64,000 bases of DNA from Leucoraja ocellata (taxonomy: Eukaryota): NCBI GenBank assembly GCA_036785375.1, contig JAWMAR010000201.1, positions 124,001-188,000 of the forward strand. The letters are read 5' to 3'. Positions 882 through 48,200 of this stretch are shown here, piece after piece (position 1 is the first letter of the stretch; the number at the start of each line of letters is the position of its first letter). The notes below the pieces were generated by a model that saw only the letters and a program-made list of their open reading frames with translations, was not told the origin of the DNA and did no database searches. A program made the position numbers and the translations under genes.

Positions 882-1039
882 TCACTCCTGGCCATTGGCT
901 CCATCTGGCAGAAGCAACTCGATCGTGACCTCTTTGTTCAGAGCAGAGAACGTCACCACGGGCTCCCCAACAGACGCCTGTGGGCTGATCGCACTGTAGT
1001 CTTCTTCTGTGTCCTTGCCCAGGGCCTGATACGTTGGAT
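882..1039 (-). CDS. Gene A exon 6: ITAM DPTYQALGKDTEEDYSAI, degenerate repeat VTFSALNKE, stop
   Basis: ctctgtccccag acceptor, DxxYxxL-x7-YxxI, TGA at 884-882. Confidence 0.85.
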
Positions 1040-2419
1040 CTGGGGACAGAGGCAATGATGTGAGCAAACTGGGGAAGTAGAAACAAAGAACTGCAAATGC
1101 TGGACATAAAGTGCATGAATAGCTGAGCAGGTCAAACAGCATCTCTGTGGAGAACATGGACAAGTGCCGTTGCGGGTCGGAGTCTGATGAAAGGTCTCGA
1201 CCTGAAATGTCATGTATCCATTTTTCTCCAGAGATGCTGCTCCAGCACTTCGTGTCCTTTTGTGTGAGGGATCACTGAACACAAACAGTTTACAGTGTAA
1301 CAGGAGGCTTGGAGCCCGTCCTGTTCCCACTGTTCTGTGTGGAGTGATCCAGCGAGCCTCCCCCCAGCCCATCTCCTCTCCCCATTTCAGTTTCTCTCCT
1401 ATCATATACTTGTAGGTCTTTATATTACTTATATTTCCTCCCATAAGGGATAGTAGAATTAGGCCATTTGGCCCATCAAGTCTACTCGGCAATTCAATCA
1501 TGGCTGATCTCGCTCCTAACCTCATTCTCCTGCCTTCTCCTCATAAACTCTGACACCTGTACTAATCAAGAATCTATCTATCGCTTCCTTAAAAATATCC
1601 ACAGATGACCTCCACAGCCTTCTGTGGCAGAGAATTCCACAGACTCACCACCCTCTGACTAAAGACATTTCTCCTCATCTCCTTCCTGAAAGAACCTCCT
1701 TTAATTATGAGGCTATGACCTCTAGTCCTAGACTCTCCCAATCGTGGAAACATCCTCTCCACATCCTGCCGCTCCATCTATTTTCATATCATCTGCAAAC
1801 TTTGCCACAGAGTCTTCAATCGATCTTCTTACAGCATCTAATTTTTGTTTGTCATCCTTTGCTGGTTTAAAATTCCCAAGTTCTCTGGCCTCCACTCATC
1901 TGCAAGTGCTGTTCACCCTTACTTTCAGTTGGATGTCACCCTGAAACTCATTCGTGAACCATGGATGGTGCACCCTTCTCCCAGAGCCTATCTGCCTCAC
2001 TGGTACTTTTGCTGAGATTTTCAATGTACTTGTACAATCTTCCCTGTAACACCCTTCAATCCCTACACCCCTCCCTATCTCTGTACCCCCTCCGGTCTCT
2101 TTCCTGATTTCTATCACTCCTCCAGCCCCCATGCAACCTATGATGAATATTCAGATGAAGCCTGCTTGTGCATATCACAGCAGTTCACATCTCCCCCTTG
2201 CACACCTTACTCTGTGCCTGGCTCTACCTCATGTCTGTATCTAGCACGACACCATCACTCTGTAAAACGTTAGAGTATTTGGAGGGTTATGGTCTGAATG
2301 CAGGTATATGGGACTAGGGGAGATTATGTGTTCGGCACGGACTAGAAGGGTCGAGATGGCCTGTTTCCGTGCTGTAATTGTTATATGGTTATATGGTTAT
2401 ATAGTATTTCCAATCTCCC

Positions 2420-2456
<37 letters not shown>

Positions 2457-2915
2457 GTCCCTACCCCTCTCCCCCTCTCTGCTTCTCTCCCCCTCTTCCC
2501 CTCTCTCCCCCTCTCTCTCACTGTCTATCCCTCTCTCTCCCCCAGCTCTCTCCCTACCCCCCTCTCTCTCTCTCCCCATCTCTCTCTCTCCCCTCTTCCC
2601 CTTTTCTCTCTCTGCTCCCCTCTCTTTCCCCGTCTCACTCTCTCTCTCCCCTTCCTTCACTCTCTCCCCCTCCCTCTCACACACCCCTATTTTTCTCTCT
2701 CTCCCCATCTCTCTCACCCCTCTCTCTCCCCCTCACTCTCTCTCCCTCTTTCACCCCCTTTCACTTTCTCTTTCTCCCCTTTCACTCTCTCTCTCCCACT
2801 CTCTCCCATTCTCTCTCCCTCCACTAACTCTCTCTCCCCATCTCTATCTCTCTCCCCTCTCTCTTCCTCTTCTCCCCGTCTCTCTCTTCCCCCTTCCTTT
2901 TCTCTCTCCCCGCCC

Positions 2916-2951
<36 letters not shown>

Positions 2952-5900
2952 CCCCTATTTCTCTCTCTTCTCTTCTCTCTCTCTCCCATAAAATCTCCCA
3001 TAGCCACCGTAGCATTATTTTATTACACGTACATCTACCTCTGTCTCCACATCTCTCTAATCCACATTGATTTATCTCCCTCGACACCTCTCTCTCGCTC
3101 AATTTATTTTGTCTCTAAATTTCTCTCTCCATCTGCCTTTTTGTTTTGCTTGTTGCCCCTCTCTCTACCAGAACCTGCCGTTCTCTGACTGCCTACCTTG
3201 TGGATCTGCCTTGGCAGCTGTCGGTGTAATCATACTGTAGTTGGTGACTTTCTCTTTATTCAGGGCCTGGTAGTTGGTATCAGGGTCTCCTTCAGTCGAG
3301 CTGGGCCCAGGCATCTCCTCATCCTGGGCACTCCCTTTGTTTCCAGTGTCAGCAATTCCCACAGGTGAATAAATCCCTTCCTCATTGTCTGTGGGGGATA
3401 TAATGGAGGCGAAAATGGAAGATTAAGATCCACTTGGTCCCATTTCCCTCATTCTTCACACTTCTCCCTATGGCAGCACCATCTCTCGGTCTCCTCCATT
3501 GAAGGACACATGAGAGAACAGATTTCAAGAAAACAATTAGGGACGGGAGGGGGAGGGGGGGGAGGGTGGGAGGGGGGGGGGGGGTGGGGGTGGGGGGTGG
3601 AGAGCTGGCATCGACCTAATGAGCTGAAAGATCTTGTAAATATTTAAATCTGCTCTTCCACACTTTTTCTGATGTTACCAACCATGCCCCGATCGTCACT
3701 GCTTTCTCTGTGTTGGGAGCAAACCCCAACTCAGTGTCATCCCACTGAGCAAAAGTCCCACATCCCGGGAATTTGAGGAAATTTCCTTGGAATCCTCTGC
3801 AAAAAAATATTCTTGTGGAAACATACAAATTAGGGGCAGGTATAGTTCTCTTTGCCCCTCCCATCTGTGCCCCATCACTACAGTAGGTCATTATCTTAAC
3901 AACAGATTCCCACCCACCTCTGTGACCTTTCTACCTTGGGTCAGGAAGAATGCATACAGTTCTGCCTTTATCATATTAAAAAACTCTGGTTTTATTGCAC
4001 TTTGGGGAGGAGAGTTCCAAAAACTCACCACCCTCAGACCAAAATGGTTTATCTTCACTTTAGCAATAAACAGGTGGCTGCTTATTTGTGAAGCCTTGTT
4101 CAAAATTCTCCCACAAGAGCAGCATCTTCTCCACATAGGCTGTGGGCCGAGGAGCTTTATTCTACAGTTCCATGACCCAAGTCACCAAACTACATGAAAT
4201 TTTCACATATTGTGTAAAAATATTATATAAATCACCACTGAAACTCGTCATGAACAAGACTTGCACATTTTTATTAAATTAGAGAAAAAACGGAAAAAGT
4301 TTGGGTATTTTTAGTCCAACCAAAGCACGTTTAACATTGAGTTGTCTGCCAGTTGGCCAATCACGCGCTTTGTTTCAGGCTAGCACACAACATAGCTGAG
4401 AGGGCTTCACTGATGACTGTTTTACCGGAGATTCCAATGAAGATTCTTTCTAGTTCTGTGGAATACATGTCGTGGAAACTTGCAGCCGGGTAATTGAATT
4501 TAGTGAGAGAAGCATTAAGAAATCTGAAAAATGTGCAGCTAAGTGGATAGAAGTGGAAGAAAGTCTTGAAAGCAAAGTCCCTGCTGAGATGCTGCAACCC
4601 AAAGTTGTGAAACTTTGTGAATCAACTCAAACTGAAAGGTAAGATCTAAGTCTGAATTTATGAAAATTAATCTGTATGGACTTTAATTTATTTAATTGCA
4701 CCCTTTATAATGTGAAAAAATGAGATTTGGAGGCTGTACATTCACTCATTTATTCATTCATTCACTCACTCATCCATTCACTCAATCATTCACTCATGCA
4801 TTCACTCATTCACATATTCATTCATTCGTGAAGTTGAGGGCCTAAACTATATGTATCAATAACAAGGTAAATTAAGCATCTTCACTAATGCCAGCTTGTT
4901 GTAGAGTAATAAGTCTTAATCATCTAGTCTTGGAGCTGCCTGCGATAACTTACCGGTAAAAGGTGCTCCGATCGTGGGGCCTATTTATTTAACATAGTGA
5001 AGCCGCGGTCTCAATTAAAAAGCGGTCGATTCGCAAACGCGGAGCCGCGGATCTTCTCCGCTAGCGGGGCGGGGGGGGGGGGGGGGGGATTGTGTACATA
5101 GTGTCGTCTGTAGCGGCCGTTTTCAGGAAAACGGAGGAATATATCTTTCTGGAATATATATAGGTATAATAATATATTATATTATATCATTGAATTATTA
5201 TATTATTATACCTATATTACTATCTGGAATATATATAGGTATAATGAAATATAGTTTAAATGGACTGCAACACGGAAATAGGCTGCCCATCGTGTAATAT
5301 GGGCATTGGCCACTAGATGGCGCTTACTTTCCCGATCTCATTTTCTAATTAGTTTAATTAATTAATGTGGAACATTTGGCAATGACGAGTTATGACATCC
5401 TTCTCAATTATATTTCATCTAAATCTGTGGAAAATTTCATGTAGTTCTGTAACTTGGGTCACAAAAACTGATTTCTAGACACATTTTTGATGCTCGGCCC
5501 ACAGCCTACAACATTTGCAGGGCCCTCATGTATACACAAGGGGAAACTTACAGTGGCAAATTGATGATGATGATTCTTTATTGTCAGGTTTACCTCGGTA
5601 CAGTGATATTCTTTGTTTTTGCAAACAAAGTACACAAAAGCGTCGCCACAAAGGCACCCGACAAAATTACAAAAAGTGCTCGTCTGTTCTTCGTCCCCCC
5701 CATTCTGCAGGCAAGTTTCTGCATGTCTTTGACACCTAGGAGGAGATTCAAGCACCTGGGAGATACTTACATATCCAGAGGAAGAAAGTGCAAACTCCAC
5801 ACAGACAGATTTGGTGGTCAGGATTGAACGTGATGTCAGAATAAAGCCCGGGTGCCCGGAGGTGTGAGGCCGCAGTTCCTGCCATCCTGCGTGCCTGGGC

Positions 5901-8900
5901 TCTGAAGGGAATGTCAGTATTGCAACAATGCAGGGTCATTGCCAGAGCACATGGGGGATTCTAGCAGTGGTTCTGAACACCAGAGGGATGATTCGGAGTA
6001 CCCATCGGCTCCAGCAACGCCAACTTCCCAGAAATCAGCTTCTGAAAATACCCAGGAGTTGCTGAAGGCAGTGAGAGATCAGCAAATCCCCTTACCTTTG
6101 GCAGTGGTGTGTCCTTTCTTCCCTGCTTTCTTCTGACCTAGTTCAGGAGAGACAGAGGGGCAGTTAGCACAAAGATCCAGCACGGACCCACTGATGTAAA
6201 CTGCAGATGCATCATGCTGACTTCCCACACTGCCCATCTACCTCGCTGCGTGCATTCTACGTACTTATCATGAGTTTGATTTTTTTTATACTCGGGAGAG
6301 CTTAAGAATTACCTCGTACAGTGGGACAGGCCCTTTTGCTTATGAGGCTGAAGGCTGATAAATCCCAGGACCTGATAGTCTCCATCCCAGGGTACTTAAT
6401 GAGATGGCTCTAGAAATTGTGGATGCATTGGTGATGATTTTATAATGTTCTATAGATTCAGGATCAGTTCCTGTGGATTGGAGGGTAGCTAATGTTATCC
6501 ACTTTGCAAGTAAGGAGCAAAAGGGAAAAACGAGGAATTATAAACCAGTTAACCTGACATCGGTGGTGGGAATGATGCTGGAGTCAATTATAAAAGATGA
6601 AATAGCGGCACATTTGGACAGCAGTAACAGGATCGGTCTGAGTCAGCATGGATTTACGAAGGGGAAATCATGCTTGACGAATCTTCTGGAATTTTTTGAG
6701 GATGTAACTAGGAAAATGGCCAAGGGAGCCAGTGGATGTAGTGTACCTGGACTTTCAGAAAGCATTTGATTAGGTTCCACATAGGAGATTAGTGGGCAAA
6801 ATTTGGGCACATGGTATTGGGGGTACAGTGCTGACATGGAGAGAAAATTGGTTGGCAGACAGGAAACAAAGAGTAGGGATTAACGGGTCCCTCGCAGAAT
6901 GGTAGGCAGCGACTAGTGGGGTACCACAAGGCTCGGTGCTGGGACCACAGCTATTTCTAATATATATTAATGATTTAGATGAAGGGATTACAAGTAACAT
7001 TAGCAAATTTGCAGATGACACAAAGCTGGGTGGCAGTGTGAACTGTGAGGAGAATGCTATGAGCATGCAGGGTGACTTGGACAGGTTGGGTGAGTGGGCA
7101 GATGCATGGCAGATGCAGTTTAATGTGGATAAATATGAGGTTATCCACTTTGGTGGCAAGAACAGGAAGGCAGATTATTATCTGAATGGTGTCAAGTTCG
7201 GAAAAGGGGAAGTATAACGAGATCTGGGGGTCCTTGTTCATCAGTCACTGAAAGTAAGCATGCAGGTCCAACAGGCAGTGAAGTAAACTAACGGTATATT
7301 GGCTGTCATAACAGGAGGAGTTGAGTATAGGAGCAAAGGGGTCCTTCTGCAGTTGTGCAGGGCTCTAGTGAGACCACATCTGGAGTATTGTGTGCAGTTT
7401 GGTCTCCAAATTTGTAGAAGACCATTCTTGCTATTGTGGGAGTGCAGTGTAGGTTCACAAGGTTAATTCCCGGGCTGGCGGGACTGTCATTTGCTGATAG
7501 AATGGAGCGACTTGGCTTGTAGGCACTGGAATTTAGAAGAATGAAGGGAATCTTATTGAAATTCATATAACCATATAACCATATAACAATTACAGCACGG
7601 AAACAGGCCATCTCGGCCCTACAAGTCCGTGCCGAACAATTTTTTTTTCCTTAGTCCCACCTGCCTGCACTGATACCATAACCCTCCATTCCCTTCTCAT
7701 CCATATGCCTATCCAATTTATTTTTAAATGATACCAACGAACCTGCCTCCACCACTTCCACTGGAAGCTCATTCCACACCGCTACCACTCTCCGAGTAAA
7801 GAAGTTCCCCCTCATGCTACCCCTAAACTTCTGTCCCTTAATTCTGAAGTCATGTCCTCTTGTTTGAATCTTCCCTATTCTCAAAGGGAAAAGCTTGTCC
7901 ACATCAACTCTGTCTATCCCTCTCATCATAAAGTCCCCCCTTAACCTTCTGCGCTCCAGAGAATAAAGACCTGACTTATTCAACCTATCTCTGTAACTTA
8001 GTTGTTGAAACCCAGGCACCATTCTAGTAAATCTCCTCTGTACTCTCTCTATTTTGTTGACATCCTTCCTATAATTGGGCGACCAAAATTGTACACCATA
8101 TAACATATAAGATTATTAAGGGATTGGACACGCTAGAGGCAGGAAACATGTTCCCAGTGTTGGGGGAGTCCAGAACCAGGAGCCACAGTCAAAGAATATG
8201 GGGTAGGCCATTTAGGCCAGAGGCGATTTTCGAGCGACAGTCACCACCGGCCTGTTGCATAAATGACGCGCAATTGACGCCCAAGTGGGACAGACCCTTT
8301 GGAATTCTCAGCTGCTTCGGGCATTTGGAGTAAAATCAAAGTGCAGGAGGAACTTTGCCATTCAGGGAGGGAATCAACAGGCGTTTGGGGTCGGGAGCCT
8401 TCATCACACTGATGATTAGTCTTTTGAATTCCTCCAGCACTTGCGTTGTGCTCATGGTTCCAGCATCTACAGTTTCTTGTGTCTGTTACCTCTGGTTTAT
8501 CATCCAGTCCCTGCCCTCTCCATGCTGCCCTAACCCAAGAAGACCCCCACTTAACTGGTCTGTCCACAGCAGAAGCAGGCGGTGAATCCCAAGGCACTGA
8601 ACCACAGGCACAGGAAGGTGATTGTCACGGCCATCCTAACTCGGGAGCACATGCCCGAAGAGCCTGTGAACAGAAAGAAACGGGATACTCACCGGCGTTC
8701 CGTGCACAGAGTTGAGGATCACTGTGCATCATGTGCATTATTGTCATTACCTATGACAATCCGTGTTAATTTACATGTGAGACAGAAATAGCGTCCTGTC
8801 TGGTTTTGAAAACGTGACCATCCATGTGTGTTTGACCATTTGTGTGTCACGCTGTATGGTGTGTATGCAAGATCAGCCATGAATGAATGGTGTAGACCTG

Positions 8901-11900
8901 ATGGGCCGAATGGCCTAATTCTGCTACTCTAACATGAACTTATGATCCTGCTCTTTAACTGTTCACACCTGTCTATTGCATGTCTGAAACACTCAAGGTG
9001 TGTTTGTGCCCGTGATTGTGTATTCTGGCTGTTCATATGTATATCTGCGACTAGATGTGTGAGATGTGTAATGGTCTGTGTGTGCTTAACTATGTATGAA
9101 TGCAATTAGTCTTATAGTCACACAACGCGGAAACAGGCCCTTCGGCTCAACTTTCCTCATCTAAACTATTTCCACCTGCCCGCTTTTGGCTTATATCCCT
9201 CCAAATCTACCCTGTCCATGTACCTGTCTAAATGTGTATTTAACGTTATGTATAACTAAGTGCATACATTTCACTTTGTGTGTCAGAGAGAGATTCTGAT
9301 GGTTGTATCTGTGTGTGATGGTGAGAATGTGATTTTTAGTGCAGTTGGCTGTATCTTTGATTGTTCATCTGTGTGTCTGTGATTGCGTATGCAATTCTAT
9401 GATTGTTCAGATAACTGTGTATGTATGTGTGTGTGTGTGCATGTGTGTGTGTTCATGAGATTGTATTGATTTGTGTGTGTGAGGCGGTGTACCTTTTTGA
9501 TTTGATTACTTCTTTGGATCTGTGTGTGCGTGTGGATGTGTATCTGATTTCTATGCCTGTGTGTGGGGGAGAGAGACAGAAACTATGTATATGTTTGCAT
9601 GTCTATGTATGACAGACCATGTGTCTGTATGTGAGAGGCTGGGCATCCAACTTTGCAGATAGCTTTATTGTGCAGTGTTACAGGTATGTGTGGCCACTTA
9701 TGTTTAACCGTGAGACGGTTTGTGCCAATGGTGTGTGATTTTCTCTGCACAGGTCTGCGTTTGTGTGAGACTATGTGTAAGTGCATAATTCTCATGTCCC
9801 TATCTGCAACTCATTATGGGAGGTAGGTAGGTGCATGTGTGCAAGTGTACGTCGGTAATGGTGAACTTGTGACATGTTTGAGATTGTGTTTGTGTAAATA
9901 CATGAGTGTGTAAGTTTCACTGGGAGCAAGACTAGTTGGATGAGATTCCTGCTGATATGTACACGACTATCTAGTGGACGACCGTGTGATTGAGTGAGTG
10001 GTTCAATGCATATGCACGTGTGTCCCTTTCCACTTCGACGACTGTGTGAGATTGGTGTCGGGACAGGAGAGAAATTACTGGGGTGCAGGGGGGGGAGACA
10101 TAACAAAAAGTCCAACCAGTTTTTTGCATAAACTCGCCAATGAAGTTACAGGCTGGGGCCACGTCAACGGATAGGTCCTCCTGGGTTGCCTCCGAAAGGC
10201 ATTTGTACACGGCGCTGTTGGTGTTGGAGTCAGGTGTGACGGTCAGCTGCGCGCCTCCGAATTCCACATGGTGTCTGCTGTCGTCAGATATTTTGGTGCT
10301 ACCTTGGTACCAGTGGAATTTTGTTCCTTGTGCCAGGGTAGCGCATCTCAACTCCAACTGACAGGGACTGCCCGAGGCGGAGAGTTTCTCAACCGTGTAG
10401 GCAATCTTTCCCGCGGAACCTGGGGAGGAGAGAGTGAGGTTAGAGCCCAGTCATATCGGCACGGCACACGGGGTCATCAACACAGGGCCACACGACCTGA
10501 CTGAACCGGGCCGTGTTGCATCACGGGGATAGCAAGTGCACGATCAGTTTAAAGGGCAGAACACCCATCTGCTCAAAAGGCAGGAAACTTCCTGTAAATA
10601 TTCCCCGCATACAGCATGGGACAGTTCAGCGTGCGTCTGCACCTACACGCAGTGGGAGCATCCTACTCCTGCAAAGAGTAGGAGTAAACAAGTCCTTTTC
10701 AGAATGGCAGGTAGTGACTAGTGGGGTACCGCAAGGCTCAGTGCTGGGACCCCAACTATTTACAATATATATTAATGATTTGGACGAGGGAATTAAATGC
10801 AACATCTCCAAGTTTGCAGATGACACTAAGCTGGGGGGCAGTGTTAGCTGTGAGGAGGATGCTAGGAGGCTGAAAGGTGACTTGGATAGGCTGGGTGAGT
10901 GGGCAAATGCATGGCAGATGCAGTATAATGTGGATAAATGTGAGGTTATCCACTTTGGTGGCGAAACAGGAAAGCAGACTATTATCTAAATGGTGGCCGA
11001 TTATGAAAAGGGGAGATGCAACGAGACCTGGGTGTCATGATACACCAGTCATTGAAAGTAGGCATGCAGGCAGTGAAGAAAGTGAATGGTATGTTAGCAT
11101 TCATAGCAAAATGATTTGAGTATAGGAGCAGGGAGGTTCTATTGCAGTTGTACAGGGTCTTGGTGAGACCACACCTGGAGTATTGCGTACAGTTTTGGTG
11201 TCCAAATCTGAGGAAGGACATTATTGCCATAGAGGAAGTGCAGAGAAGGTTCACCAGACTGATTACTGGGATGTCAGGACTTTCATATGAAGAAAGACTG
11301 GATAGACTCGGCTTGTTCTCATTAGAACTTAGGAGATTGAGAGGGGATCTTATAGAAACTTACAAAATTCTTAAGGGGTTGGACAGGCTAGATGCAGGAA
11401 GATTGTTCCCGATGTTGAGGAAGTCCAGGACAAGGGGTCACAGCTTAAGGATAAGGGGGAAATCCTTTAGGACCGAGATGAGAAAAACATTTTTCACACA
11501 GAGAGTGGTGAATCTCTGAAACTCTCTGCCACAGAAGGTAGTTGAGGCCAGTTCATTGGCTATATTTAAGAAGGAGTTAGATGTGCCCTTGTGGCTAAAG
11601 GGATCAGGGGGTATGGAGAGAAGGCAGGTACGGGATACTGAGTTGGATGTTCAGCCATGATCATATTGAATGGCGGTGCAGGCTCGAAGGGCCGAATGGC
11701 CTACTCCTGCACCTATTTTCTATGTTTCTATGTATGCTGTGAGGGGGGGGGGATTCAGTTGGTGGGAAGGGTCGGCGACGGGGGAAGAGTTTCTGTGGGA
11801 GAGGGGATTCGGTGTGTGGGGAGATTCGGTGATGGAGGCAAATGTCGATGGGCCCACAGAGATTCAATGGGCGGAGAGAGTCTGTGATGGGAGTGTCTGC

Positions 11901-14560
11901 ACTGTGTGAGTGGTTTCAGCGGGCAGAGATGGAGTATCCGTGGGCTGTGGGAAATTCAGTAGATGGGAACATTCATGGACTGATGATGTCCAGAATTCAA
12001 GCAGTCATTGCATGTAAAGGATATGCAGCAACATACTAAACATGACTACTTTCATTTACATGACATTGCTGTGTCCCAAACATTATGGTGCCCTGAAATG
12101 GGGAACTATGTATAAACACAGCTGTAATTTCTACATGGTGAAACCAAAATGTGTAAAAATTGCCTTTATGAAAATCTTACAATATGCACTTTAACCAGTG
12201 TGATTTTTTTCTATTACAAATCTCAAATTGTGGCGTATTGAGGCAAATAAATAAATAATGGGTCTTTGTCCCAAACATTATGGAGGGCGCTGTAACCAAA
12301 AAGGAAGAAACTAAGAATGAACACAAACAGATAGAAGCAAGAGGCGGCCACTCGGCCCACAAGCCTGCCACCATTCATTATGATCCTGGTGATCTGTCGC
12401 AGGCCTCAACTCCTGTTCTGTGCCAGTTCCCCATAGCTCTCTAACCTCACAAAAACTTACAGACTTCCTCTTTAAAATCCCCAATGATCTGGCCTCCAGA
12501 GCCTTCTCGGGTAAAAACATTCTAGAGATTCATCACTTCTGCAAAATATTCTGTTTTAAATTGCCACTTGTAACTCTCTACCCTATTCAACAATCTTCCA
12601 CTGGTTATTACATCTTATCATCTACCTTGTTGAACTCCAGCAGGATCTTGTAGGATCAGTAAGATCACCCCTCATTCTTCTAAACCCCAAACAATATTGA
12701 TCTAATTTCTTTAGTTATTTGCGATAGGATTGTCCTTTCATCCTGTGAATTGTCAGAGTGAATATCTTTGGGACTGCTCACAATGCTGGTGTATCTTCTT
12801 CAATTAGATGAACAAAACTGCACAGTAGTGCTGGTGTGAACATCTTTCACAACCTCACCAAAACCAGCAGTCCCCCGCGAGTCATGGCGCCAGGCGGTGG
12901 AGAGCTCTAATCGAACTAGCTGCCTGCCCCATTTCCAGGGATAGGTCCGTGCCTGGGTGCAGTTAGAAAGGGAATACGCGCTGTCCACGGGCACTCTGAG
13001 GGAGTTCCGGGACCGCTGGGCTCCGCAGAGTGTTGAATGTATCCTCAATAAGGATTGTAGCATAGTTGTATAGTAGTTTATTAAGGATATATGTTTGTAT
13101 TGTGTTATGGTGGTGGGTTCTAGCTTGTTTTATTGTAGTGTAAATATTAACTTTAAGTAATTGAATACATTTTATGATTTTTTTTTTAAACAGCAGTCCC
13201 TGGGTTACACCAGAGTGTCGTTCCTGAGAACGGTCCAGCAGCCGGTATCTATGCGTCAAAAACTAAACTTTTCTGCAGAAATCTACATTTTGCCCTATAC
13301 ACATGCTAAAATTCTTGCATTTCATCAAATAATCACACCAACATTACCCGTAATTCTGCAAATGGAATGTTTACTGAATGCAGTCATTAATAAATACCAT
13401 GAAATACATTGTTACTATTATCACCAGCTCACCAGCTTGAAAAATGCTCTATAAGATGTATGGGAGAATTTGTGTAAAGTTGGATAAAGTTGACATTTTT
13501 GGATATTGATGGAATCACAAGATGTGGGGTTAGTGCCGGACAATGGCATTGAGGTAGATCACCATTCCCCCCTCCCATCGCCCTTTCTTTATTGCCCCCC
13601 ATCCCACTGGCTGCCACCACCCTTCTTTCTGTGTCCTGCCAGCTGACTTCACCCGCTCTCTTGATTTCCTTTTGATCAGACTTGTCACTTTCTCTCCTCC
13701 CACATTCTCCCTCTCTCCCTACTCCTCACCCTGCTTTTGCTGACTCCTCACCCTCTCTCTCTCTCTCTCTCGCTCTCTCTCTCATAACCTGTGGGTCCTC
13801 CTCACAGTTCACTTTTCCTGTGATACACCCATTTAAAGCTTATTCTGTACAATGGAGACTCTAAGAAAGGGGAGAGATATGGTCCCTCACAGCCCTCTTG
13901 TGCTGACCACCCCTTGAACCACTACAATATCACCTCACCAGGTGCTAACCACCCCCCCACACCGCATCCTCACTTCCTCAACCAGTTAGTATAGAAATGA
14001 CTTATAAGTCTGAAGCAGCAGTGGCGGCGGTATGGGGTGAGAAAGCCGGTTGAGATGCAGTGAGAGCCCTTGGGAGAATGTTGTGGCTAAAAAGGGGGAA
14101 AGGACCTTTGCCTGGACTGTGCTGGGGAAGAGGTTGACCCACAGCACTGATCACAGTGTATATCATTTACCCTCTGTGTCTCGGGGGATGCCGAGACAAT
14201 GGGCAATAGAGGGGAACTGAGAATTCAAGAGCAACAGCAGATCCTCCGTTTGGTTCTCCCTCCCCATCACTACGCCCCTCTGAACCATCCTCAGGAGCAA
14301 CAGCCCCTCAGTCTATTATTCATTCCTCAGTGCTCTTTCCCACTCCCTCTTGCTATCACTCTCTCACTACTCCCTGTCTCATCCTGCTGATTGTCCTCGC
14401 TCCCTGTCTCTGCCGCTCGCCCCTTCTTGCCCATAAGCTCACTTTTCCCACCCTCTCTCACTCCGCGCTTCCTCTGCCTTCCATGTCCCCACCCCAACTC
14501 ACCAGTCCACATGGAGCAGAAGATGATGACTCCCAGTACAGCCTTGGGCAGGGTATCCAT
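882..14560 (-). CDS. Gene A (whole model): single-C2-Ig-domain, SLAM/CD2-related type I receptor with two ITAMs; 6 exons, 279 aa
   Basis: Exons 14560-14503, 10419-10138, 8663-8556, 6137-6096, 3388-3197, 1039-882. All junctions are phase 1 and sum to 840 nt in frame. Domain order is leader, Ig, TM, basic stretch, ITAM tail. Confidence 0.75.
1075..1260 (-). mobile_element. Penelope-associated 3' repeat (ctgaagaagggtctcgacccgaaacgtc type)
   Basis: Same motif as the tail attached to the Penelope element at 40760-40890; further copies near 16890, 23820, 26585, 51300 and 59000. Confidence 0.55.
1450..1900 (-). mobile_element. CR1 LINE 3' fragment
   Basis: Translates to ESRTRGHSL...FSQRVVSLWNSLPQ (CR1 ORF2 C-terminus). 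Confidence 0.85.
2413..3170. repeat. CT-rich low-complexity tract
   Basis: (CT)n-like polypyrimidine sequence. Confidence 0.95.
3197..3388 (-). CDS. Gene A exon 5: cytoplasmic, EEGIYSPV plus ITAM DTNYQALNKEKVTNYSMI
   Basis: cccccacag acceptor, AAG|GTAGGC donor, 192 nt open frame, DxxYxxL-x7-YxxI. Confidence 0.85.
4136..5508. mobile_element. non-autonomous DNA transposon with terminal inverted repeats
   Basis: taggctgtgggccgag (4136-4151) and its exact reverse complement (5493-5508). Subterminal inverted motif tgacccaagt..aactacatgaaattttc. No coding capacity. Confidence 0.75.
6096..6137 (-). CDS. Gene A exon 4: basic juxtamembrane segment QKKAGKKGHTTAK
   Basis: ctctgtctctcctgaactag acceptor, AAG|GTAAGG donor, 42 nt, phase 1-1. 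Confidence 0.7.
6345..8220 (+). mobile_element. degraded CR1 LINE (RT region) with a nested antisense CR1
   Basis: DWRVANV, QHGFTKGKSCLTNLLEFFE, FADDTKLGG motifs. Confidence 0.9.
7565..8101 (-). mobile_element. CR1 LINE 3' end (second family, (TTATATGG)n tail) nested in CR1
   Basis: VQFWSPNYRKDV...VVAVWNELP translation; interrupts the host CR1 at gaaacatataag. Confidence 0.85.
8551..8663 (-). CDS. Gene A exon 3: stalk and transmembrane segment GSSGMCSRVRMAVTITFLCLWFSALGFTACFCCGQT
   Basis: Acceptor tttctttctgttcacag and ~23 hydrophobic residues. The exon ends at the weak donor A|GTTAAG (8556) or reads into TAA (8553-8551). Confidence 0.75.
10138..10419 (-). CDS. Gene A exon 2: C2-type Ig domain (GSAGKIAY...CQLELRC...FHWY...AVYKC...APACNFI)
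   Basis: Polypyrimidine tract and CCCCAG acceptor. Four-Cys pattern CxxxLxC..W..YxC..C typical of CD2/SLAM C2 domains. 282 nt. Donor is TG|GCGAGT (GC type), or alternatively T|GTAACT ending the exon at 10150. Confidence 0.85.
10672..11731 (+). mobile_element. CR1 LINE, 5'-truncated, (TTTCTATG)n tail
   Basis: [17 protein letters not shown] and [11 protein letters not shown] motifs. Confidence 0.95.
11980..12294 (+). mobile_element. Tc1-like transposon right end
   Basis: Transposase C-terminus RIQAVIACKGY..TY*, direct repeats tgtcccaaacattatgg (twice), terminal ctg|ta. Confidence 0.7.
12865..13200 (+). mobile_element. Tx1/L1-clade LINE 3' fragment with 10-bp TSD
   Basis: LEREYALSTGTLREFRDRWAP C-terminal motif; TSD cagcagtccc at 12865-12874 and 13191-13200. 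Confidence 0.7.
14503..14560 (-). CDS. Gene A exon 1: signal peptide MDTLPKAVLGVIIFCSMWT
   Basis: ATG, hydrophobic core and a canonical phase-1 donor G|GTGAGT. Confidence 0.8.
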
Positions 14561-14779
14561 TGTTTGACAGCTGCTGCAAAGGGGTCTGAGTGGCAGAGGT
14601 GGCAAATATTCCGTGTGATCCCTGTGAGACAAGGTCACAAACTGGCTGCAGATAGAGAGGGAGAGGCTCAGAATGGTCAAGTGACCACAAGACTCAGCAC
14701 TTCCTGACGCATGTGAGAGCAGAATCAAAATAAAAGCCACAGGGACCAGCCCAGATCAGCCCTGAGATCTGGCTGTAGA

Positions 14780-15815
14780 GAGGGAGGGGGTGTAGACAGA
14801 GAGAGAGACTATGAGAAGAGGGGACAAAGAGAGGGAGAGAAAGGGCAGAGAGGTGGGGAGAGAACGAGGAAGTGAGCATAGAGAAGGAGATGGGGCAGGG
14901 AGGAAATGGGTCACAGAGGGTGGGAGAGTAAAGGAGAACGGGAAGGGAGAGAAAAGGAAAGGGGTCAGAGAAAGAAAGGAACGGGGCAGATAAAGAGGGT
15001 GGAGGAGTGATATTGCAGTGGGGGGGAAAGAGAGGGTGAGGGAGAGATAGGTAAATGTGGGGCACAGAGAAGGAGAAGGGAGAGGAAGAGAAAATGTGTA
15101 GGGCCATAGGGGAGGGGCAGAGAGCAAGGGGGAGTGAGAGATGTGCCAAAGAAAAAGAGTCAGAGAATGCGGAGAGAGGGGGGAAAGGCGGGAGTAAGAG
15201 CGGGGAGAGAGACAGGAAAGAAGGAGATGGTCAGAGATAGAGGGAGAGAGTAAGGGGAAAGGGGGGAGACAGAGCCACACTGGGATTGATGGAAAGAGGG
15301 ACATAGAGGGGGTTGGGAGAGAAAGAAGGGAAGCCAACAAAGAGGCAAATAGATAAAAAAGCAGTGGGGGAGAGAAAGATTGGAAAACAGGCAGATAGAG
15401 TGAGAGAAAGACAGACTTAGGGGGGAGGGTGAGAAAGAAGGGAAAGTAAAGACAAAAGGTCAGAGCGAGAGTGATGGGAGGGAGAAAGGTGCATGGAGCA
15501 GCAGTAAGGGAATGAGGGAAAGTAGAGGGGAGCAGAGAGAGGGGGCAAGAAAGGAAAAGGGGCAAATTGATTGAGGAAAGTGGGACAGAGAGAGAGAGAA
15601 AGTAATGAGTAAAACGGGACAAGAGAGGGTGAAGGTGTGTTAAGATGAAGTGGGCTAGAGGATGAGGAGGAGACAGTGAGTGTGGTGATGGAAAGAGGAA
15701 GACAGGAAACAAAAGCAAACAGACAAAGAAAGAGGGGAATAGAAACTTGCAGATAACGAGAGACAGGGAAAGCAAAAGAAGAATGTTGATAAGAAGAGTG
15801 GATGAGAAAGTGGGA
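14780..15815. repeat. GA-rich low-complexity tract upstream of gene A
   Basis: Polypurine sequence. Confidence 0.9.
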
Positions 15816-43775: not shown

Positions 43776-44900
43776 ACAATATTTCAAATGTGGCCGGAGT
43801 CCATCCCTATTTATGTGTACGACCCCTCATGAAATAAATACTAGCATTGCATTTGAATTCTTTACTGCCGATTCAACTTGCAGATTAACTTTTTGGGAAT
43901 ATTGCACCAGCACTCCAAAGTCCCTTTGCACCTCCGATTTCTGGATTCTCTCCACATTTAGAAAATAGTCTACACCTTAATTACACTATATTCCATCTTC
44001 CACTTCTCTGCCCACTCTCCCTACCTTTCCTAATCCTTCTGCAGAATCCCAGCTTTCTCTACATTACCGGCCCCTCCACCTATTTTTCACATCCACAAAC
44101 CTGGCCACAAAGCCTTCAATCCCTACATCCAAATCATAGCTGAATGGTAACTGTCACCTCCAGTTGCTTCCAATTACTAGAGGAGGTGGGTGTTGCTTTA
44201 TGTTTTCTCTGCCAGATACTTGACCACTCACTGACTTGCTTGGATCCCATAACATTTCTCACATTTGCGCATTGAGGAATACATGGAGCAGAATACCTGC
44301 TGGCAAGCACATCTTTCATAGGTCAACAGGAGGAACGCATCAATAGCATTATATGGCAGAATGACACCTATGCCTGGCCCATACAGAACCAAATATGACA
44401 ACCTTTCCCTCTGATGACACAAGAATGGCTGCGGGCAAAGGGAATGCAACGGGCTGATATGGGGCATCCATGATGCATTCCTGTTTCAAAGTGAAGCGCG
44501 CGGTCCATCCACATCCTGAAGGTGTGCAGATTTGTACGTTCATTGGCCTCTGTAAAATTGCTCCTAATGTTCAGGCAGTGGATGAGCAAGTGAGATTGTA
44601 TACAACTCGTGTGAATGACTGATCGATGGACGGAGTGAACTCGTTGGGCCGAAGGGTCTGTTTCCTTGCTGTAAAAAAGTGAAGGGTGCTTTCAGGAGCC
44701 CGTTTACAATCACCAACAGAATCTGCACCCTGTTCCCTCCGTGGGCTCACTGATGCAGGGACTGTGGGCTGGGTATCTCACGGAGCCGGGAGCCAGACGA
44801 TGGGCCGCATGGCCTGCTCCTGTGCTCTGTGATTCTCCCAGCTCCGTTTCCTCCTCCAGTCACTGAGCTGTCCTACTGACTGCCTCTCTTGTCTCCACAG

Positions 44901-45218
44901 CTGGGACTGGGGCCGCCGCTGGCACCGTGACCGGAGCTCGGGGACACTCGGTCTCCTTACCTGCTGGGATCACAGTCACACCGAACATTACGGAAGTGAC
45001 GTGGAGGCAGAAATCGCCCAGATTCAAGATAGCGGAATGCTCGAATGGGAAGATGAATTACTTTCACATCAATTACATGGGACGGGTAACTCTTCACCGC
45101 AGGAACTTCAGTTTGGAAATCCGTGATCTACGGGGAGAGGACGCGGGTGAATATGAGGTGACTTTTGGAACAAGTTCAGGAGATGAAACTCAGGCAATAG
45201 TCCGACTGGAGGTGTACG
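44901..45218 (+). CDS. Gene B V-set Ig exon without the canonical B-F disulfide
   Basis: G.SVSLP..VTW..GRVTL..NFSLEIRDLRGEDAGEYEV..VRLEVY; tctccacag acceptor, G|GTGAGT donor. Confidence 0.92.
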
Positions 45219-48200
45219 GTGAGTGAGACTGCCACAGAGGTCCCGGGTTTCACTGGCTGCTCAACCCGTCTAATTAATGGGTGAGGGCAGATCCTGTGCA
45301 TTCCCCAGTTTACTGAACCCCACTGACTGCCAGTGTGCGGAGTGGGGGTCACGGCCATAGTGCGACTGGGGCAGTGCCAGGCTGGGGGACAGACCCATCA
45401 CATCCCTGGAGGCTGGACCAGGGGCCGCCACGGAACAAACCATCAACGGGGAACCGCTTAGCTCGGAGGCTGGCGGAGCTGAGCACATGGGGAGGGAGAA
45501 ATTGATAGGGTGGGAGGGGTAGTTTAGTTGAGCCGAACAGTCTGTATCTCTGAGACCTAGTTAAACAGATCCCACTGTATCCACAGGTCAAAAGCCTTGT
45601 ATGTTATGTTCAGGGATCCCAGTTGTTCCATCTGTCTCCCACAGCTCTGCCTGTTCATTCCCAAGACTGGGGAGTGAGTTCAGCAAGGTTCTTATTCCTC
45701 AGCCTCCATGCTCTGCTTTGCTGAGCGTTGTCCTGTGTATTTATTCCACAGAACATACTGTCCCAATGAGTGAGGCAGTACTCGTACAAAACAGCACACT
45801 CACACCCAGGAATATTGTTCCTATCTCACTCTTACAATAATATGTGTTCTGGAAGGTTAGATCGCATGGGATCCAAGGAGAGATAGCTGAATGGATAGCA
45901 AATTGGCTCCATGGAAGGAAGCAGAGGGTGATGGTGGAAGGTTGCTTCTCGGACTGGAGGCCTGTGACTAGTGGTGTGCCTCACAGTTCTGTGCTGGGCC
46001 CGTTACAGTTTGTCATCTACATCAATGATTTGGATGAGAACATACAGGGCAAGATTACAAGTTTGCTGATACAAAAGTGAAATGGTTTTGCAGATGGTGA
46101 AGATGGAATTTAATACAGAGAAGTGTGAGGTGTTGCATTTTGGGACATCGAACAAGGGCAGGATCTACACAGTAAATGGTAGGCCTCTGGGGAGTGTTGT
46201 AAAGCAGAGGGATCTAGGAGTGCAGGTACATGGTTCTTTGAAGGTCGAGTCACAGGTAGTTATGGTGGTCAAAGAGACATTTGGCACATTGGCCTTCATC
46301 AGTCAGAGTATTGAGTATAGAAGTTGGGAGGTCATGTTGCAGTTGTATAAGACGTTGGTGAGACCGCATATTGTTTTCAGTTCTGGGCACCATGTTACAG
46401 GAAAGATATTGTCAAGCTTGAAAGGGTTCAGAAAAGATTTACGATGACGCTGCCAGAACTAGAGGATGTGAGCTGTTGGGAGAGGTTGAGTAGGCTGGGT
46501 CTCTATTCCATGGAGCACAGGAGGATGAGGGGAGATCTTATAGAGGTGTACAAAATCATGAGAGGAATAGATCGGGGAGATGCACAGAGTTTCTTACCCA
46601 GAGTAGGGGAATCGAGGACCAGAGGACATAGGTTCACGGTGAAGGGGAAAATAATCTGAGGGGTAACATTTTAACCCAAAGGGTGGTGGGTGTATGGAAC
46701 AAGCTGCCGGAGGAGGTAGTTGAGGCTGGGACTATCCCATTGTTTAAGAAACAGTTAGACAGGTACATGGATAGGACAGGTTTGGAGGGATATGGACCAA
46801 GCGCAGGCAAGTGGGACTAGTGTAGCCGGGGCAAGTTGGGCCGAAGGGCCTGTTTCCACACTGTATCACTCTATGACTCCGACTCTGTATAATGTTCACA
46901 ATAATCTCACCCAGTAGCGTCTGGCTGGAGTCTGGCTGGGAAATCTTCCCTCCTTCATCCCAGGGTTAACCAGTTCCCATGGTTGGGAGGAGAACATCAG
47001 AGCATGGAACATGAGCAGGAGGAGGCTATTTGGCCCTTCAAGCTTGCTCCCCACTCATTGAGATCAGCGCTGGTCTGACCTTGGCCTCAGCTCAACTTTC
47101 CTGCTTATTATTGCACCTCAATATTTCTGCGCTATTCCAGTATTATTGGGGACTTTCTCTTGCACCATTCCACTGTATTGTGCCAGTCGTATTTATTATT
47201 CTCTTATTGTTACTAAACACACTGCTTACTCCATGTCATGTAAGCAAGGAATTTCATTGCATCTTGACCAGATGATAATATATTAATCTGAATCTGGCGA
47301 TTGATTGATTGGTTGATGATTTCTTGTTACATACACTTGGTACAGAGAAATTCTTTGTTTTGCATATAATACACACATACGCAAAGAGTCTCCACATATA
47401 GGGTGCCGACAAGGTTACATAGAATAGAATAGAATAGTTTCTTTATTGTCATTGTAACATGGGCCATGTACAACGAAATTTAAAATGTCAGCCAGTCAGT
47501 GCAGCATTCAAACATTTCTAAAGCTAACGCTACATCCACGGTAAAATAATAAAGATAAACAAATAAATAAATATCACGGACAAAGCAAGCATACACACCC
47601 AACCCTCCATCCTTCTGTCGATTTCACAGTTACCACAGTCCCTTAGTCTGTGTCGCCCCTCCGTTCCTTGGCGGCTACATTTAGTGCTTTTATAGCAGTG
47701 GGGTAAAAACAGTTTTTTAGTCTATTTGTCCTTGTCCTTGTGGATCTGTACCGTCTGCCTGACGGCAACAGTTCAAACAGGGAGTGTCCGGGGTGGGAAA
47801 TGTCCTTTATTATATTCTGGGTTTTTTTGGTGCAGCGGGAACTGTGTAAGTCCTCCAAGGTAAGGAGAGGGCAGCCGACAATCCTCTGGGCATTGTCAAT
47901 GGCCCTCTGGAGCGCTTTCCTCTGAGCCGCTGTGCAGCTGGTGTACCACACGCATACACAGTATGTTAGTATGCTCTCAATGGAGCACCGATAAAAGGAC
48001 AGCAGCAGTCTCTGAGTGATGTTGTTCTTCCTGAGCACCCTCAGGAAGTGCAGTCTCTGCTGGACCTTTTTCAGCAGCGCAGTGGTGTTCACGCTCCACG
48101 TCAGGTCCTCCTCAATATGGATTCCCAGGAAGCGGAAATCCGCCACCCTCTCTACACAGTCCCCTCTGATAGTCAGTGGTACCATGTCCGTTTTGTTCTT

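What the first reader, a model, noticed from the sequence alone, without database searches (positions are those of the whole stretch)
882..14560. Hidden single-Ig SLAM/CD2-like receptor carrying its own tandem ITAMs
Seen in sequence: six phase-1 exons join into 279 aa comprising a leader, one C2-type Ig domain with the CD2/SLAM four-Cys pattern, a stalk with a free Cys, a Cys-rich TM, a basic stretch, then EEGIYSPV, DTNYQAL-x7-YSMI and DPTYQAL-x7-YSAI. Established: CD2/SLAM receptors are V+C2 and signal through ITSMs (SAP/EAT-2), while multi-ITAM tails typify CD247 and single Ig plus one ITAM typifies CD3/CD79. Inference: this is a self-contained activating receptor, or an Ig-bearing signalling subunit, in cartilaginous fish that matches no standard family. 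It lacks the CD3 CxxC motif and has no acidic TM residue.
Basis: partly seen in the sequence, partly recalled or inferred. Interest (0 to 1): 0.85.

Follow-up and report, generated by a model that had tools for sequence, protein, structure and literature searches.

The report
Single-Ig SLAM-derived receptor with ITAMs
A skate-like genome encodes a small immune-cell surface protein that keeps only the membrane-proximal antibody-like domain of a SLAM-type receptor and carries its own two activation motifs; unnamed relatives exist in sharks and rays, so it points to an unstudied lineage-specific signalling receptor.

Summary
The six minus-strand exons are real. The 279 aa length is not reproduced: the short exon-2 donor gives 275 aa, and a donor 33 nt further gives 286 aa. 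Orthologues favour the longer form.

All six exon peptides map in order onto 275-277 aa "uncharacterized proteins" of Mobula and Hypanus. Sixteen relatives in eight elasmobranch species share the leader, one Ig domain, a TM helix and a tyrosine tail. No relative was found outside elasmobranchs, and no paper was found.

The Ig domain is SLAM C2-like:
- It has the four-Cys spacing.
- Its best structural match is the NTB-A C2 domain, Z 9.2.
- hhalign gives 96.6% against SLAM-like proteins and 37.6% against CEACAM-like ones.
- It is sister to SLAM-like C2 in a tree.
- A canonical SLAM-like gene lies 30 kb away.

A probable RNA contig ends exactly at the exon 5 donor. The other junctions rest on homology alone.

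Two ITAMs occur only in batoids; sharks have one or none. The signalling function is inferred. The scan's notes hold no earlier record of this family.

The parts
14503..14560 (-). Exon 1: start codon (caaacaATGG) and signal peptide, 58 nt, ends in phase 1
   Evidence: The peptide is 52.6% identical over 19 aa to residues 1-19 of Mobula P0002 and Hypanus P0067. There is no in-frame Met upstream within the stop-free segment 14330-14755.
10117..10419 (-). Exon 2: single C2-type Ig domain with four Cys plus the start of the stalk. This is the favoured long form, 303 nt. The alternative in-frame donor after 10150 gives 270 nt.
   Evidence: tblastn with P0067 gives one HSP over 10420-10115, matching residues 20-120, E 5.6e-29. 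Pfam Ig_3 E 0.0018 and I-set E 0.0049, both below the cut-offs. AlphaFold pLDDT 80.8 with seven strands. Best structural match is the NTB-A C2 domain, Z 9.2.
8556..8663 (-). Exon 3: stalk with an unpaired Cys (codon 8647-8649) and a Cys-rich transmembrane helix (about 8566-8634); donor A|GTTAAG
   Evidence: 45.7% identical over 35 aa to P0067 residues 121-155, E 3.5e-8. Kyte-Doolittle mean 1.96 over 19 aa. X1 depths of 0.24 and 1.23 in the two bins match a contig confined to this exon; this is my arithmetic, and the piece itself is not listed.
6096..6137 (-). Exon 4: basic juxtamembrane stretch QKKAGKKGHTTAK, 42 nt
   Evidence: It fits P0067 residues 157-167, exactly between the exon 3 and exon 5 matches, but alone it is not significant (E 3.0). 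Both organism-A runs show zero depth here.
3197..3388 (-). Exon 5: EEGIYSPV (3360-3383) and the first ITAM, DTNYQALNKEKVTNYSMI (3228-3281)
   Evidence: 48% identical over 64 aa to P0067 residues 168-231, E 1.5e-14. The 469-letter X11 contig lies only on 3197-3394, starts exactly at the predicted donor edge, and has 261 letters that lie elsewhere. An X1 contig lies on 3202-3394.
882..1039 (-). Exon 6: second ITAM, (D)PTYQALGKDTEEDYSAI (987-1040 including the split codon), the VTFSA motif, and the TGA stop at 882-884
   Evidence: 45% identical over 40 aa to P0002 residues 231-270, E 3e-9. Pfam ITAM PF02189 scores 18.7 bits against a cut-off of 22.2. The same motif in orthologue P0002 scores 25.4 bits and passes.

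Best explanation
This is an intact, expressed gene for a type I membrane protein of about 286 aa. It belongs to an elasmobranch-restricted offshoot of the SLAM/CD2 receptor family.

The lineage lost the ligand-binding V domain and kept only the four-Cys C2 domain. In place of ITSMs its tail carries a near-invariant membrane-proximal EEGIYSx[LV] motif and canonical ITAMs: two in batoids, including this window, and one or none in sharks.

Most likely mechanism (inferred, not shown): the protein is clustered at the surface, either directly or through dimers formed by the stalk Cys, and sits in ordered membrane through palmitoylation of the CFCC cluster. Src-family kinases then phosphorylate the ITAM tyrosines. 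The doubly phosphorylated ITAMs dock the tandem SH2 domains of Syk or ZAP-70 and give an activating signal without a separate adaptor chain.
For: Gene structure and conservation:
- Six phase-1 exons have AG/GT sites and no stops.
- All six exon peptides map in order on Hypanus P0067, at residues 1-19, 21-107 (20-120 with the long exon 2), 121-155, 157-167, 168-231 and 233-272.
- Sixteen relatives in eight elasmobranch species share the leader, one Ig domain, TM and tail.

Expression: an organism-A contig ends exactly at the exon 5 donor edge, 3197. It continues for 261 letters that do not lie on the adjoining 47 bases of genome. The flanking intron bins have zero depth.

SLAM C2 origin:
- The C-x5-C...W...[YF]xC...C spacing is found in 9 of 9 family sequences tested, in 4 of 5 SLAM-like proteins, and in 0 of 4 CEACAM5-like proteins.
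- The best non-family domain score, 28.8 bits, is to a Ly-9/SLAMF5-like C2 domain.
- hhalign against SLAM-like proteins gives probability 96.6% and E 6.7e-10. The CEACAM5-like control gives 37.6% and E 3.4e-4.
- Of 48,161 PDB chains, the top structural match is the NTB-A (SLAMF6) C2 domain: Z 9.2, rmsd 2.1 A, 78 residues, 24% identity.
- In the tree, the family (support 91) is sister to SLAM-like C2 (97), with joint support 89.
- A V+C2+TM gene with TVYAQV lies at 44.8-53.7 kb on the plus strand.

ITAMs:
- Two strict matches occur in the window, both in this gene.
- The Mobula orthologue passes Pfam's ITAM cut-off.
- Eleven of 16 relatives keep at least one Yxx[LI]-x6-8-Yxx[LI].
Against: - No binding or signalling experiment exists.
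- Reads did not show junctions 1-2, 2-3, 3-4 or 5-6. Exon 4 had zero depth in both organism-A runs, and the two raw RNA runs of organism D gave no depth on exons 3-5.
- X1 and X11 are only guessed to be RNA.
- Without a V domain there is no known ligand-binding surface, which fits a signalling subunit as well as a receptor.
- Five of 16 relatives have no ITAM (two Heterodontus, three Mustelus), whereas EEGIYSx[LV] is kept in 15 of 16. The ITAM may therefore not be the family's core function.
- At sequence level the Ig domain matches human SLAM chains in the PDB no better than myomesin or CEACAM1. No SLAM chain appears at E<=10, and Foldseek's top hit is CEACAM5.
- The tree holds only proteins that the query itself retrieved. 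It contains no CD2, CD3, CD79 or FCRL reference sequences.
Confidence: 0.55

Rival explanations
1. It is an Ig-bearing signalling subunit rather than a receptor. It has no V domain, so it would pair with ligand-binding chains, for example tail-less SLAM-like receptors of the same cluster. Pairing could run through C2-C2 contacts, the stalk Cys or the membrane helix. It would then supply ITAMs to its partner, as CD79 or CD3 chains do.
For: - The only ectodomain is a membrane-proximal C2 domain.
- An unpaired stalk Cys is kept in the batoids and in Heterodontus.
- A basic residue at the outer edge of the helix is kept: RVRM here, VKI or MKI in relatives.
- Scan notes s1-900028 and s1-900021 report tail-less SLAM-like genes with charged helices just beyond the window. 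I have not checked these.
Against: - The helix has no acidic residue of the kind that couples known adaptors to basic helices.
- Scyliorhinus and Mustelus members lack the stalk Cys.
- No partner has been identified, and the neighbouring SLAM-like gene in the window has its own ITSM tail.
Confidence: 0.22
2. The tail works mainly through the conserved EEGIYSx[LV] motif as a YxxPhi sorting or docking site, or through SLAM-type SH2 adaptors (SAP/EAT-2). On this reading the protein is an endocytic, phagocytic or modulatory receptor, and the ITAMs are accessory or inhibitory (ITAMi).
For: - EEGIYSx[LV] is present in 15 of 16 relatives, whereas ITAMs are present in only 11 of 16.
- In this window both tyrosines of the first ITAM have Thr at -2 (TNYQAL, TNYSMI), so they also fit TxYxx[LI].
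Against: - None of the 16 relatives has a cytoplasmic TxYxx[VI]. The single match lies in the membrane helix.
- Both ITAMs here are canonical in spacing and have an acidic residue at -3.
- The second ITAM is kept from sharks to rays.
Confidence: 0.15
3. The model is an artefact or a dying gene: a decayed SLAM-like copy that lost its V exon, with an exon chain that is not made into protein.
For: - No annotated protein for this exact gene was found in the collections.
- The exon 3 donor is weak, and read-through meets a stop after two codons (note s1-885580).
- Exon 4 had no read depth.
Against: - All six exons are open, with canonical splice sites and matching phases.
- The same architecture is kept in eight other species.
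- Exon 5 is spliced at the predicted edge in a contig from this organism.
- Motif tyrosines and all four Cys are conserved.
Confidence: 0.06

Closest known systems
SLAM/CD2 family receptors (SLAMF1-9, CD2, CD48, CD58). Nearest tested examples: the NTB-A/SLAMF6 C2 domain (PDB 2if7) and elasmobranch 'SLAM family member 5-like / Ly-9-like' proteins.
   Same: - The membrane-proximal C2 domain has the same four-Cys spacing.
- It is the best structural, profile and per-domain sequence match.
- The two are sister groups in the tree.
- The gene lies about 30 kb from a canonical SLAM-like gene.
- Both are type I membrane proteins with a tyrosine-motif tail.
   Different: - There is no V domain. The leader joins the C2 domain directly in the window and in all 16 relatives.
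- The tail carries ITAMs instead of ITSMs. No cytoplasmic TxYxx[VI] occurs in 16 of 16 relatives.
- No human SLAM chain is a sequence-level hit at E<=10.
CD79A/CD79B and CD3 gamma/delta/epsilon
   Same: Each has one Ig domain, a short stalk with a Cys, one membrane helix and a tail with an ITAM.
   Different: - No sequence match to any CD79 or CD3 chain appears in the PDB at E<=10.
- CD3 epsilon/delta appears only in the generic Ig band of the structure search, at Z 7.0-7.5.
- There is no CxxC stalk motif and no acidic or polar helix residue.
- It has two ITAMs, each within a single exon. That classical subunits split the ITAM over two exons is recalled, not tested.
Self-contained ITAM-bearing Ig receptors: Fc gamma RIIA, CEACAM3 and other activating CEACAMs, NFAM1
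   Same: The ITAM sits in the receptor's own tail, so no adaptor chain is needed. CEACAM C2 domains are among the weaker Ig matches.
   Different: - Those receptors keep a ligand-binding N-terminal domain (recalled).
- The CEACAM5-like profile matches far less well than the SLAM-like one: hhalign 37.6% against 96.6%.
- The four-Cys pattern is absent from 4 of 4 CEACAM5-like proteins tested.
- NFAM1 and Fc gamma RIIA were not tested directly.
Expanded CD2/SLAM family of Xenopus (Guselnikov et al. 2011, Immunogenetics 63:679)
   Same: It is a lineage-specific expansion of the SLAM family with altered signalling.
   Different: In the passage I could read (PMC4536121), the Xenopus members diversify through NxxR-containing membrane helices that recruit FcR gamma. 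They do not do so by losing the V domain and carrying ITAMs in cis. The 2011 paper itself is not held, so I could not check whether it reports ITAM-bearing members.

Membership tests
SLAM/CD2 family | N-terminal V-set domain that binds the ligand | tested here: not met
   The leader exon joins the C2 exon directly, and so it does in all 16 relatives. tblastn with four V-containing SLAM-like proteins finds V-like sequence only at 44870-45352 on the plus strand. None lies in intron 1 or upstream on the minus strand.
SLAM/CD2 family | Membrane-proximal C2 domain with two disulfides (four-Cys pattern) | tested here: met
   C-x5-C-x10-W-x34-YxC-x16-C, the same spacing class as the SLAM-like C2 domains. 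Top structural match is the NTB-A C2 domain, Z 9.2. hhalign 96.6%. Sister position in the tree. Disulfide geometry in the model was not measured.
SLAM/CD2 family | ITSM (TxYxx[V/I]) in the tail, binding SAP/EAT-2 | tested here: not met
   In the window, TNYSMI fits TxYxxI and TNYQAL fits with Leu. However, 0 of 16 relatives has a cytoplasmic TxYxx[VI]. Adaptor binding cannot be tested here.
SLAM/CD2 family | Location in a cluster of SLAM-family genes | tested here: met
   A V+C2+TM gene with TVYAQV and SVYDTI lies at 44.8-53.7 kb of the same window. Scan notes report further SLAM-like genes beyond the window (unchecked).
ITAM-bearing immunoreceptors | [D/E]xxYxx[L/I]-x6-8-Yxx[L/I] in the cytoplasmic tail | tested here: met
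   There are two matches, at 3228-3281 and 987-1040. They are the only ones in six frames of the window. Pfam ITAM scores 18.7 bits here, below the 22.2 cut-off, and 25.4 bits in Mobula P0002, which passes.
ITAM-bearing immunoreceptors | Phosphorylated ITAM recruits Syk/ZAP-70 | not testable with these tools
   This needs phosphopeptide binding or a reporter assay.
CD3 chains | CxxC stalk motif and an acidic residue in the membrane helix | tested here: not met
   The stalk SSGMCSRVR has one Cys, and the helix MAVTITFLCLWFSALGFTACFCC has no D or E. Pfam Ig_4 (CD3) appears only at E 0.14 in one relative.
CD79A/B | Sequence orthology to CD79 chains | tested here: not met
   No CD79 chain is among the 36 or 23 PDB sequences matched at E<=10. 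None is among the 59 exhaustive HMMER hits whose names I looked up, which were 24 of the 59.

The most novel reading that the evidence does not exclude
Elasmobranchs built their own Ig-bearing ITAM signalling chain from a SLAM C2 domain. It would be a lineage-specific counterpart of CD79/CD3/FcR gamma that serves the tail-less SLAM-like receptors encoded beside it. The SLAM cluster would then work as a paired-receptor system with an in-cluster adaptor. In batoids, duplication of the ITAM exon would have doubled its signalling capacity.
Probability: 0.15. Interest if true: 0.8.

Novelty: new variant of a known kind. Interest (0 to 1): 0.58.

Why it matters
SLAM receptors are textbook examples of signalling through ITSMs and the SAP/EAT-2 adaptors. 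ITAM signalling is normally delegated to a few ancient subunits: CD3, CD79, zeta, FcR gamma and DAP12.

This family is conserved across sharks and rays. It discards the SLAM ligand-binding domain and attaches canonical ITAMs to the remaining C2 domain. That shows the oldest living jawed-vertebrate lineage re-wired this receptor family in a way not seen in mammals.

The finding gives a concrete, testable candidate for an activating receptor or adaptor of elasmobranch NK-like or myeloid cells, for which very few receptors are known. It also offers a natural case of ITAM exon duplication, with one ITAM in sharks and two in batoids. Practically, it adds a gene that appears to be missing from this genome's annotation.

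Tried and rejected
A hidden V exon was rejected. I read by eye the 42 stop-free minus-strand segments of 55 aa or more between 10420 and 22000, and none looks V-like. tblastn with V-containing SLAM-like proteins finds none on that strand.

Orthology to CD3, CD79 or FCRL was rejected, because the PDB sequence searches give no such hit. The Atlas lists FCRL, allergin-1 and CEACAM20 clusters tied at 0.93-0.94 behind 'SLAM family member 7'. I treat these as leads only.

A CEACAM origin was considered because CEACAM1 and CEACAM5 appear. I rejected it on the hhalign control, the Cys pattern and the tree.

These searches led nowhere:
- PDB sequence searches with the two tail exons gave nothing relevant.
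- The Atlas search with exon 5 scored at most 0.79.
- Foldseek against the PDB gave only generic Ig matches, best E 3.5e-3.
- The raw RNA reads of organism D (X23, X24) covered only repeats, not exons 3-5.
- Five literature searches found no paper on this family: by topic, and by four gene or protein accessions with 0 hits. I saw search listings only, plus passages of PMC4536121.
- Supplements are closed. Gene lists in the supplements of elasmobranch genome or single-cell papers, such as PMC10529500, might name these loci.

Full report
**What is in the sequence.** The gene lies on the minus strand. Reading 16000-8001 and 8000-1 and locating the borders gives six exons: 14560-14503 (58 nt), 10419-10150 (270), 8663-8556 (108), 6137-6096 (42), 3388-3197 (192) and 1039-882 (158, including the TGA). 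Every acceptor is AG and every donor is GT. Every junction splits a codon after its first base, so all exons are phase 1. The split codons read G, C, S, D and D.

- a hydrophobic leader;
- an Ig exon with C-x5-C, W, YxC and a fourth Cys;
- SSGMC followed by a hydrophobic, Cys-rich stretch (Kyte-Doolittle mean 1.96 over 19 aa);
- a basic 13-mer;
- EEGIYSPV and DTNYQAL-x7-YSMI;
- DPTYQAL-x7-YSAI followed by VTFSA and a stop.

I never built or searched the joined protein, so lengths are sums of exon lengths. The strict ITAM pattern [DE]xxYxx[LI]-x6-8-Yxx[LI] occurs twice in six frames of the 64 kb window, and both hits are in this gene. Fifty block shuffles gave a mean of 0.48 and a maximum of 2.

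**Corrections to the observation.** The exon lengths sum to 828 nt, or 275 aa, not 279. The orthologues have 11 more residues between the fourth Ig Cys and the stalk Cys than this model allows. Reading on past the first donor gives NFIGEFMQKT and then ACTG|GTTGGA, a second in-frame, phase-1 GT donor at 10117/10116. With that donor:
- the window has the same 15-residue spacing between the two Cys as Hypanus and Mobula, and it shares their K-T-G before the exon 3 sequence;
- tblastn with P0067 gives one unbroken HSP over 10420-10115, matching residues 20-120.

I therefore favour exon 2 = 10419-10117 and a product of 286 aa. Only transcripts can decide between the two donors.

**Relatives.** An exhaustive HMMER search of 1.84 billion representatives with the exon 2 peptide gave 59 hits at E<=0.001. 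Apart from giant multi-Ig proteins (obscurin, hemicentin-like), the best hits are four small proteins of 224-275 aa in which the match begins right after a 20-residue leader. The source names are all 'uncharacterized protein': Mobula birostris and M. hypostoma, Heterodontus francisci, Scyliorhinus canicula LOC119971552, and Narcine bancroftii.

A profile of seven of these proteins (A1) found 11 proteins at E<=0.001 among 8000 scored candidates. All are elasmobranch: Hypanus sabinus LOC132395789, Scyliorhinus torazame and seven Mustelus asterias paralogues were added. In total that is 16 proteins from eight species, four batoids and four sharks.

No chimaera, bony-fish or tetrapod protein appeared, and no skate protein either. 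A tail-only search with P0067 residues 150-277 returned only Hypanus and Mobula out of 59 candidates. The gene of this window therefore seems unannotated in the collections. The word-based search and its length window limit that statement.

All six exon peptides map in order onto Hypanus P0067:

| Exon | P0067 residues | E-value |
|---|---|---|
| e1 | 1-19 | about 1e-3 |
| e2 | 21-107 | 4.6e-29 |
| e3 | 121-155 | 3.5e-8 |
| e4 | 157-167 | 3.0 (not significant alone) |
| e5 | 168-231 | 1.5e-14 |
| e6 | 233-272 | 4e-9 |

This collinearity with gene models from other species is the main support for the exon order.

**Reads.** The look-up of sequencing runs listed no run on record as RNA for this organism. 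Two small runs of organism A (X1, X11) are guessed to be RNA, and raw RNA reads exist only for another species, organism D.

I laid X1, X11, X23 and X24 on 3150-8750, which covers exons 3, 4 and 5. The results were:
- In X11 a 469-letter contig (depth 10.7) lies only on 3197-3394. It begins exactly at the predicted last base of exon 5.
- Its first 261 letters do not lie on the adjoining 47 bases of the stretch, and the neighbouring intron bins have zero depth. The contig is therefore spliced at the predicted donor.
- Both this contig and a 203-letter X1 contig run six letters past the acceptor with one mismatch, then ten more letters that do not fit. The last six letters of exon 4 differ from the intron's last six by exactly one letter. 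This is what an exon 4 to exon 5 junction would look like, but I could not see the ten letters.
- Exon 4 itself had zero depth in both runs.
- X1's depths of 0.24 and 1.23 in the two bins around exon 3 fit a contig confined to 8556-8663. This is my arithmetic; the piece is not listed.
- X23 and X24 covered only repeats.

Expression and both edges of exon 5 are thus supported. Junctions 1-2, 2-3, 3-4 and 5-6 are not shown by reads.

**What the Ig domain is.** Pfam sees it only weakly: Ig_3 E 0.0018 and I-set E 0.0049, both below the cut-offs. PDB sequence searches give generic I-set and C2 hits, with myomesin at E 1.7e-4 and CEACAM1 at 0.015. No SLAM, CD2, CD3 or CD79 chain appears at E<=10. 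Six further tests point to SLAM C2:
1. The spacing C-x5-C-x9-12-W-x31-34-[YF]xC-x15-18-C is found in 9 of 9 family sequences tested, in 4 of 5 elasmobranch SLAM-like proteins, and in 0 of 4 CEACAM5-like proteins.
2. The best single-domain phmmer score outside the family, 28.8 bits, is to the C2 domain of Heptranchias 'Ly-9-like / SLAM family member 5-like'. CEACAM5-like scores 23.2 bits and obscurin 15.6.
3. hhalign of the family profile against six SLAM-like proteins gives probability 96.6% and E 6.7e-10 over 65 columns, sharing W-x-R-G-x-E-x-[LV]-x-N-D-x-x-H and [VI]YKC. The control against six teleost CEACAM5-like proteins gives 37.6% and E 3.4e-4.
4. I made an AlphaFold model of the long exon 2 peptide (pLDDT 80.8, seven strands) and aligned it to 48,161 PDB representatives. 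The top hit is the C2 domain of NTB-A/SLAMF6 (2if7_A residues 108-193): Z 9.2, rmsd 2.1 A, 78 residues, 24% identity. The next hits are Z 8.4 and below, with rmsd 2.5-4.3 A and 11-16% identity. Foldseek alone gave only generic Ig matches.
5. In a quick maximum-likelihood tree of 73 Ig domains over 79 columns, the 12 family rows form one branch (SH-aLRT 91). It is sister to the eight SLAM-like C2 rows (97), with joint support 89. The window groups with the batoids (95). The tree holds only proteins retrieved by the query, so it cannot exclude a closer family that was never sampled.
6. A canonical SLAM-like gene lies on the plus strand of the same window. It has a V exon at about 44867-45223 (Pfam V-set E 4.9e-11), a C2 exon at about 49680-50135, a membrane exon, and tail pieces with TVYAQV and SVYDTI.

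The Atlas look-alike search with Hypanus P0067 also ranks a 'SLAM family member 7' cluster first, at 0.94. It is tied with allergin-1, FCRL and CEACAM20 clusters at 0.93-0.94.

**The missing V domain.** The V domain is truly absent. The leader joins the C2 domain in the window and in all 16 relatives. V-containing SLAM-like queries hit only the plus-strand gene.

**The tail across the family.**
- The membrane-proximal [DE][DE][GRA]IY[ST]x[LVI] motif is present in 15 of 16 relatives. The exception is a Narcine isoform that lacks a membrane exon.
- Yxx[LI]-x6-8-Yxx[LI] occurs twice in 3 of 16 (Mobula x2, Hypanus), once in 8 of 16, and not at all in 5 of 16 (two Heterodontus, three Mustelus with short tails).
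- The window, with two ITAMs, follows the batoid pattern.
- Exons 5 and 6 are 46% identical over 28 aa around the ITAMs, which suggests an internal duplication.
- Shark tails instead carry a variable number of AEAGPxxSLR-like repeats.
- No relative has a cytoplasmic TxYxx[VI]. The skate's TNYSMI and TNYQAL are a local peculiarity.
- The tail exons have no sequence match in the PDB.

**How it most likely works.** Shown:
- an intact gene;
- conservation across elasmobranchs;
- a SLAM-type C2 ectodomain;
- a membrane helix without acidic residues;
- canonical ITAMs;
- splicing at the edges of exon 5.

Inferred from what is established for ITAM receptors: clustering leads to tyrosine phosphorylation by Src-family kinases, which recruits Syk or ZAP-70 and produces an activating signal without a separate adaptor. 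The stalk Cys may form dimers and the CFCC cluster may be palmitoylated. Both are inferred from the sequence alone. I give this reading 0.55.

Because no ligand-binding domain remains, an Ig-bearing signalling subunit for other chains is a serious rival (0.22). Candidate partners are the tail-less SLAM-like genes that the scan's notes place just beyond the window (unchecked). A role centred on the more conserved EEGIYS motif is a further possibility (0.15). A dead gene or mis-model is unlikely (0.06).

**Novelty.** The gene models exist in NCBI for other species, but all are unnamed. Five full-text searches found no paper on them. The nearest published parallel I could trace is the Xenopus CD2/SLAM expansion. 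According to a citing passage, it uses NxxR helices to recruit FcR gamma (PMC4536121). The original paper is not held, and supplements are closed.

I rate this a new variant of a known kind: a SLAM-lineage receptor without a V domain that carries ITAMs in cis.

Noticed in passing
window 44867-53717, + strand: A canonical SLAM-like gene. It has a V exon (Pfam V-set E 4.9e-11), a four-Cys C2 exon at 49680-50135, a membrane exon at about 52327-52611, and tail pieces with TVYAQV (52937-53158) and SVYDTI (within 53175-53717). Its closest protein is Rhinoraja longicauda 'HEPACAM family member 2-like', at 60-69% identity.
   Followed up: partly
window 8549-8556, - strand: The exon 3 donor is A|GTTAAG. 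If the intron is retained, the frame reads two more codons and then TAA. That would give a tail-less membrane form ending just after the CFCC cluster. Scan note s1-885580 covers the same point.
   Followed up: partly
window 3228-3281, - strand: Both tyrosines of the first ITAM have Thr at -2 (TNYQAL, TNYSMI), so this ITAM also fits an ITSM-like TxYxx[LI]. None of the 16 relatives shares this.
   Followed up: yes
window 3389-3394 and beyond (contigs of X1 and X11): Both organism-A contigs stop ten letters past 3394, at the same point. This suggests a fork in the assembly graph about 16 letters upstream of exon 5, caused by an allele, a paralogue or alternative splicing.
   Followed up: no
window about 6300-8200; also 45841-46817 and 62069-62964: These are reverse-transcriptase-like retrotransposon fragments (FADDTK...HFG motifs) and SINE-like repeats. 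In all four runs they attract depths of hundreds to thousands, with many false joints.
   Followed up: no
P0063-P0071 (Scyliorhinus torazame, Mustelus asterias): Shark family members differ mainly in the number of AEAGPxxSLR-like repeat units in the tail. Mustelus has at least seven paralogues, and three of them end before the ITAM.
   Followed up: partly
window 2400-2990 and 14700-15800: Long CT-rich low-complexity tracts lie in intron 5 and just upstream of exon 1 on the gene's strand. There are poly-G runs at 480-495, 3550-3600 and 5070-5090, and an N run at 106-429 that I left untouched.
   Followed up: no
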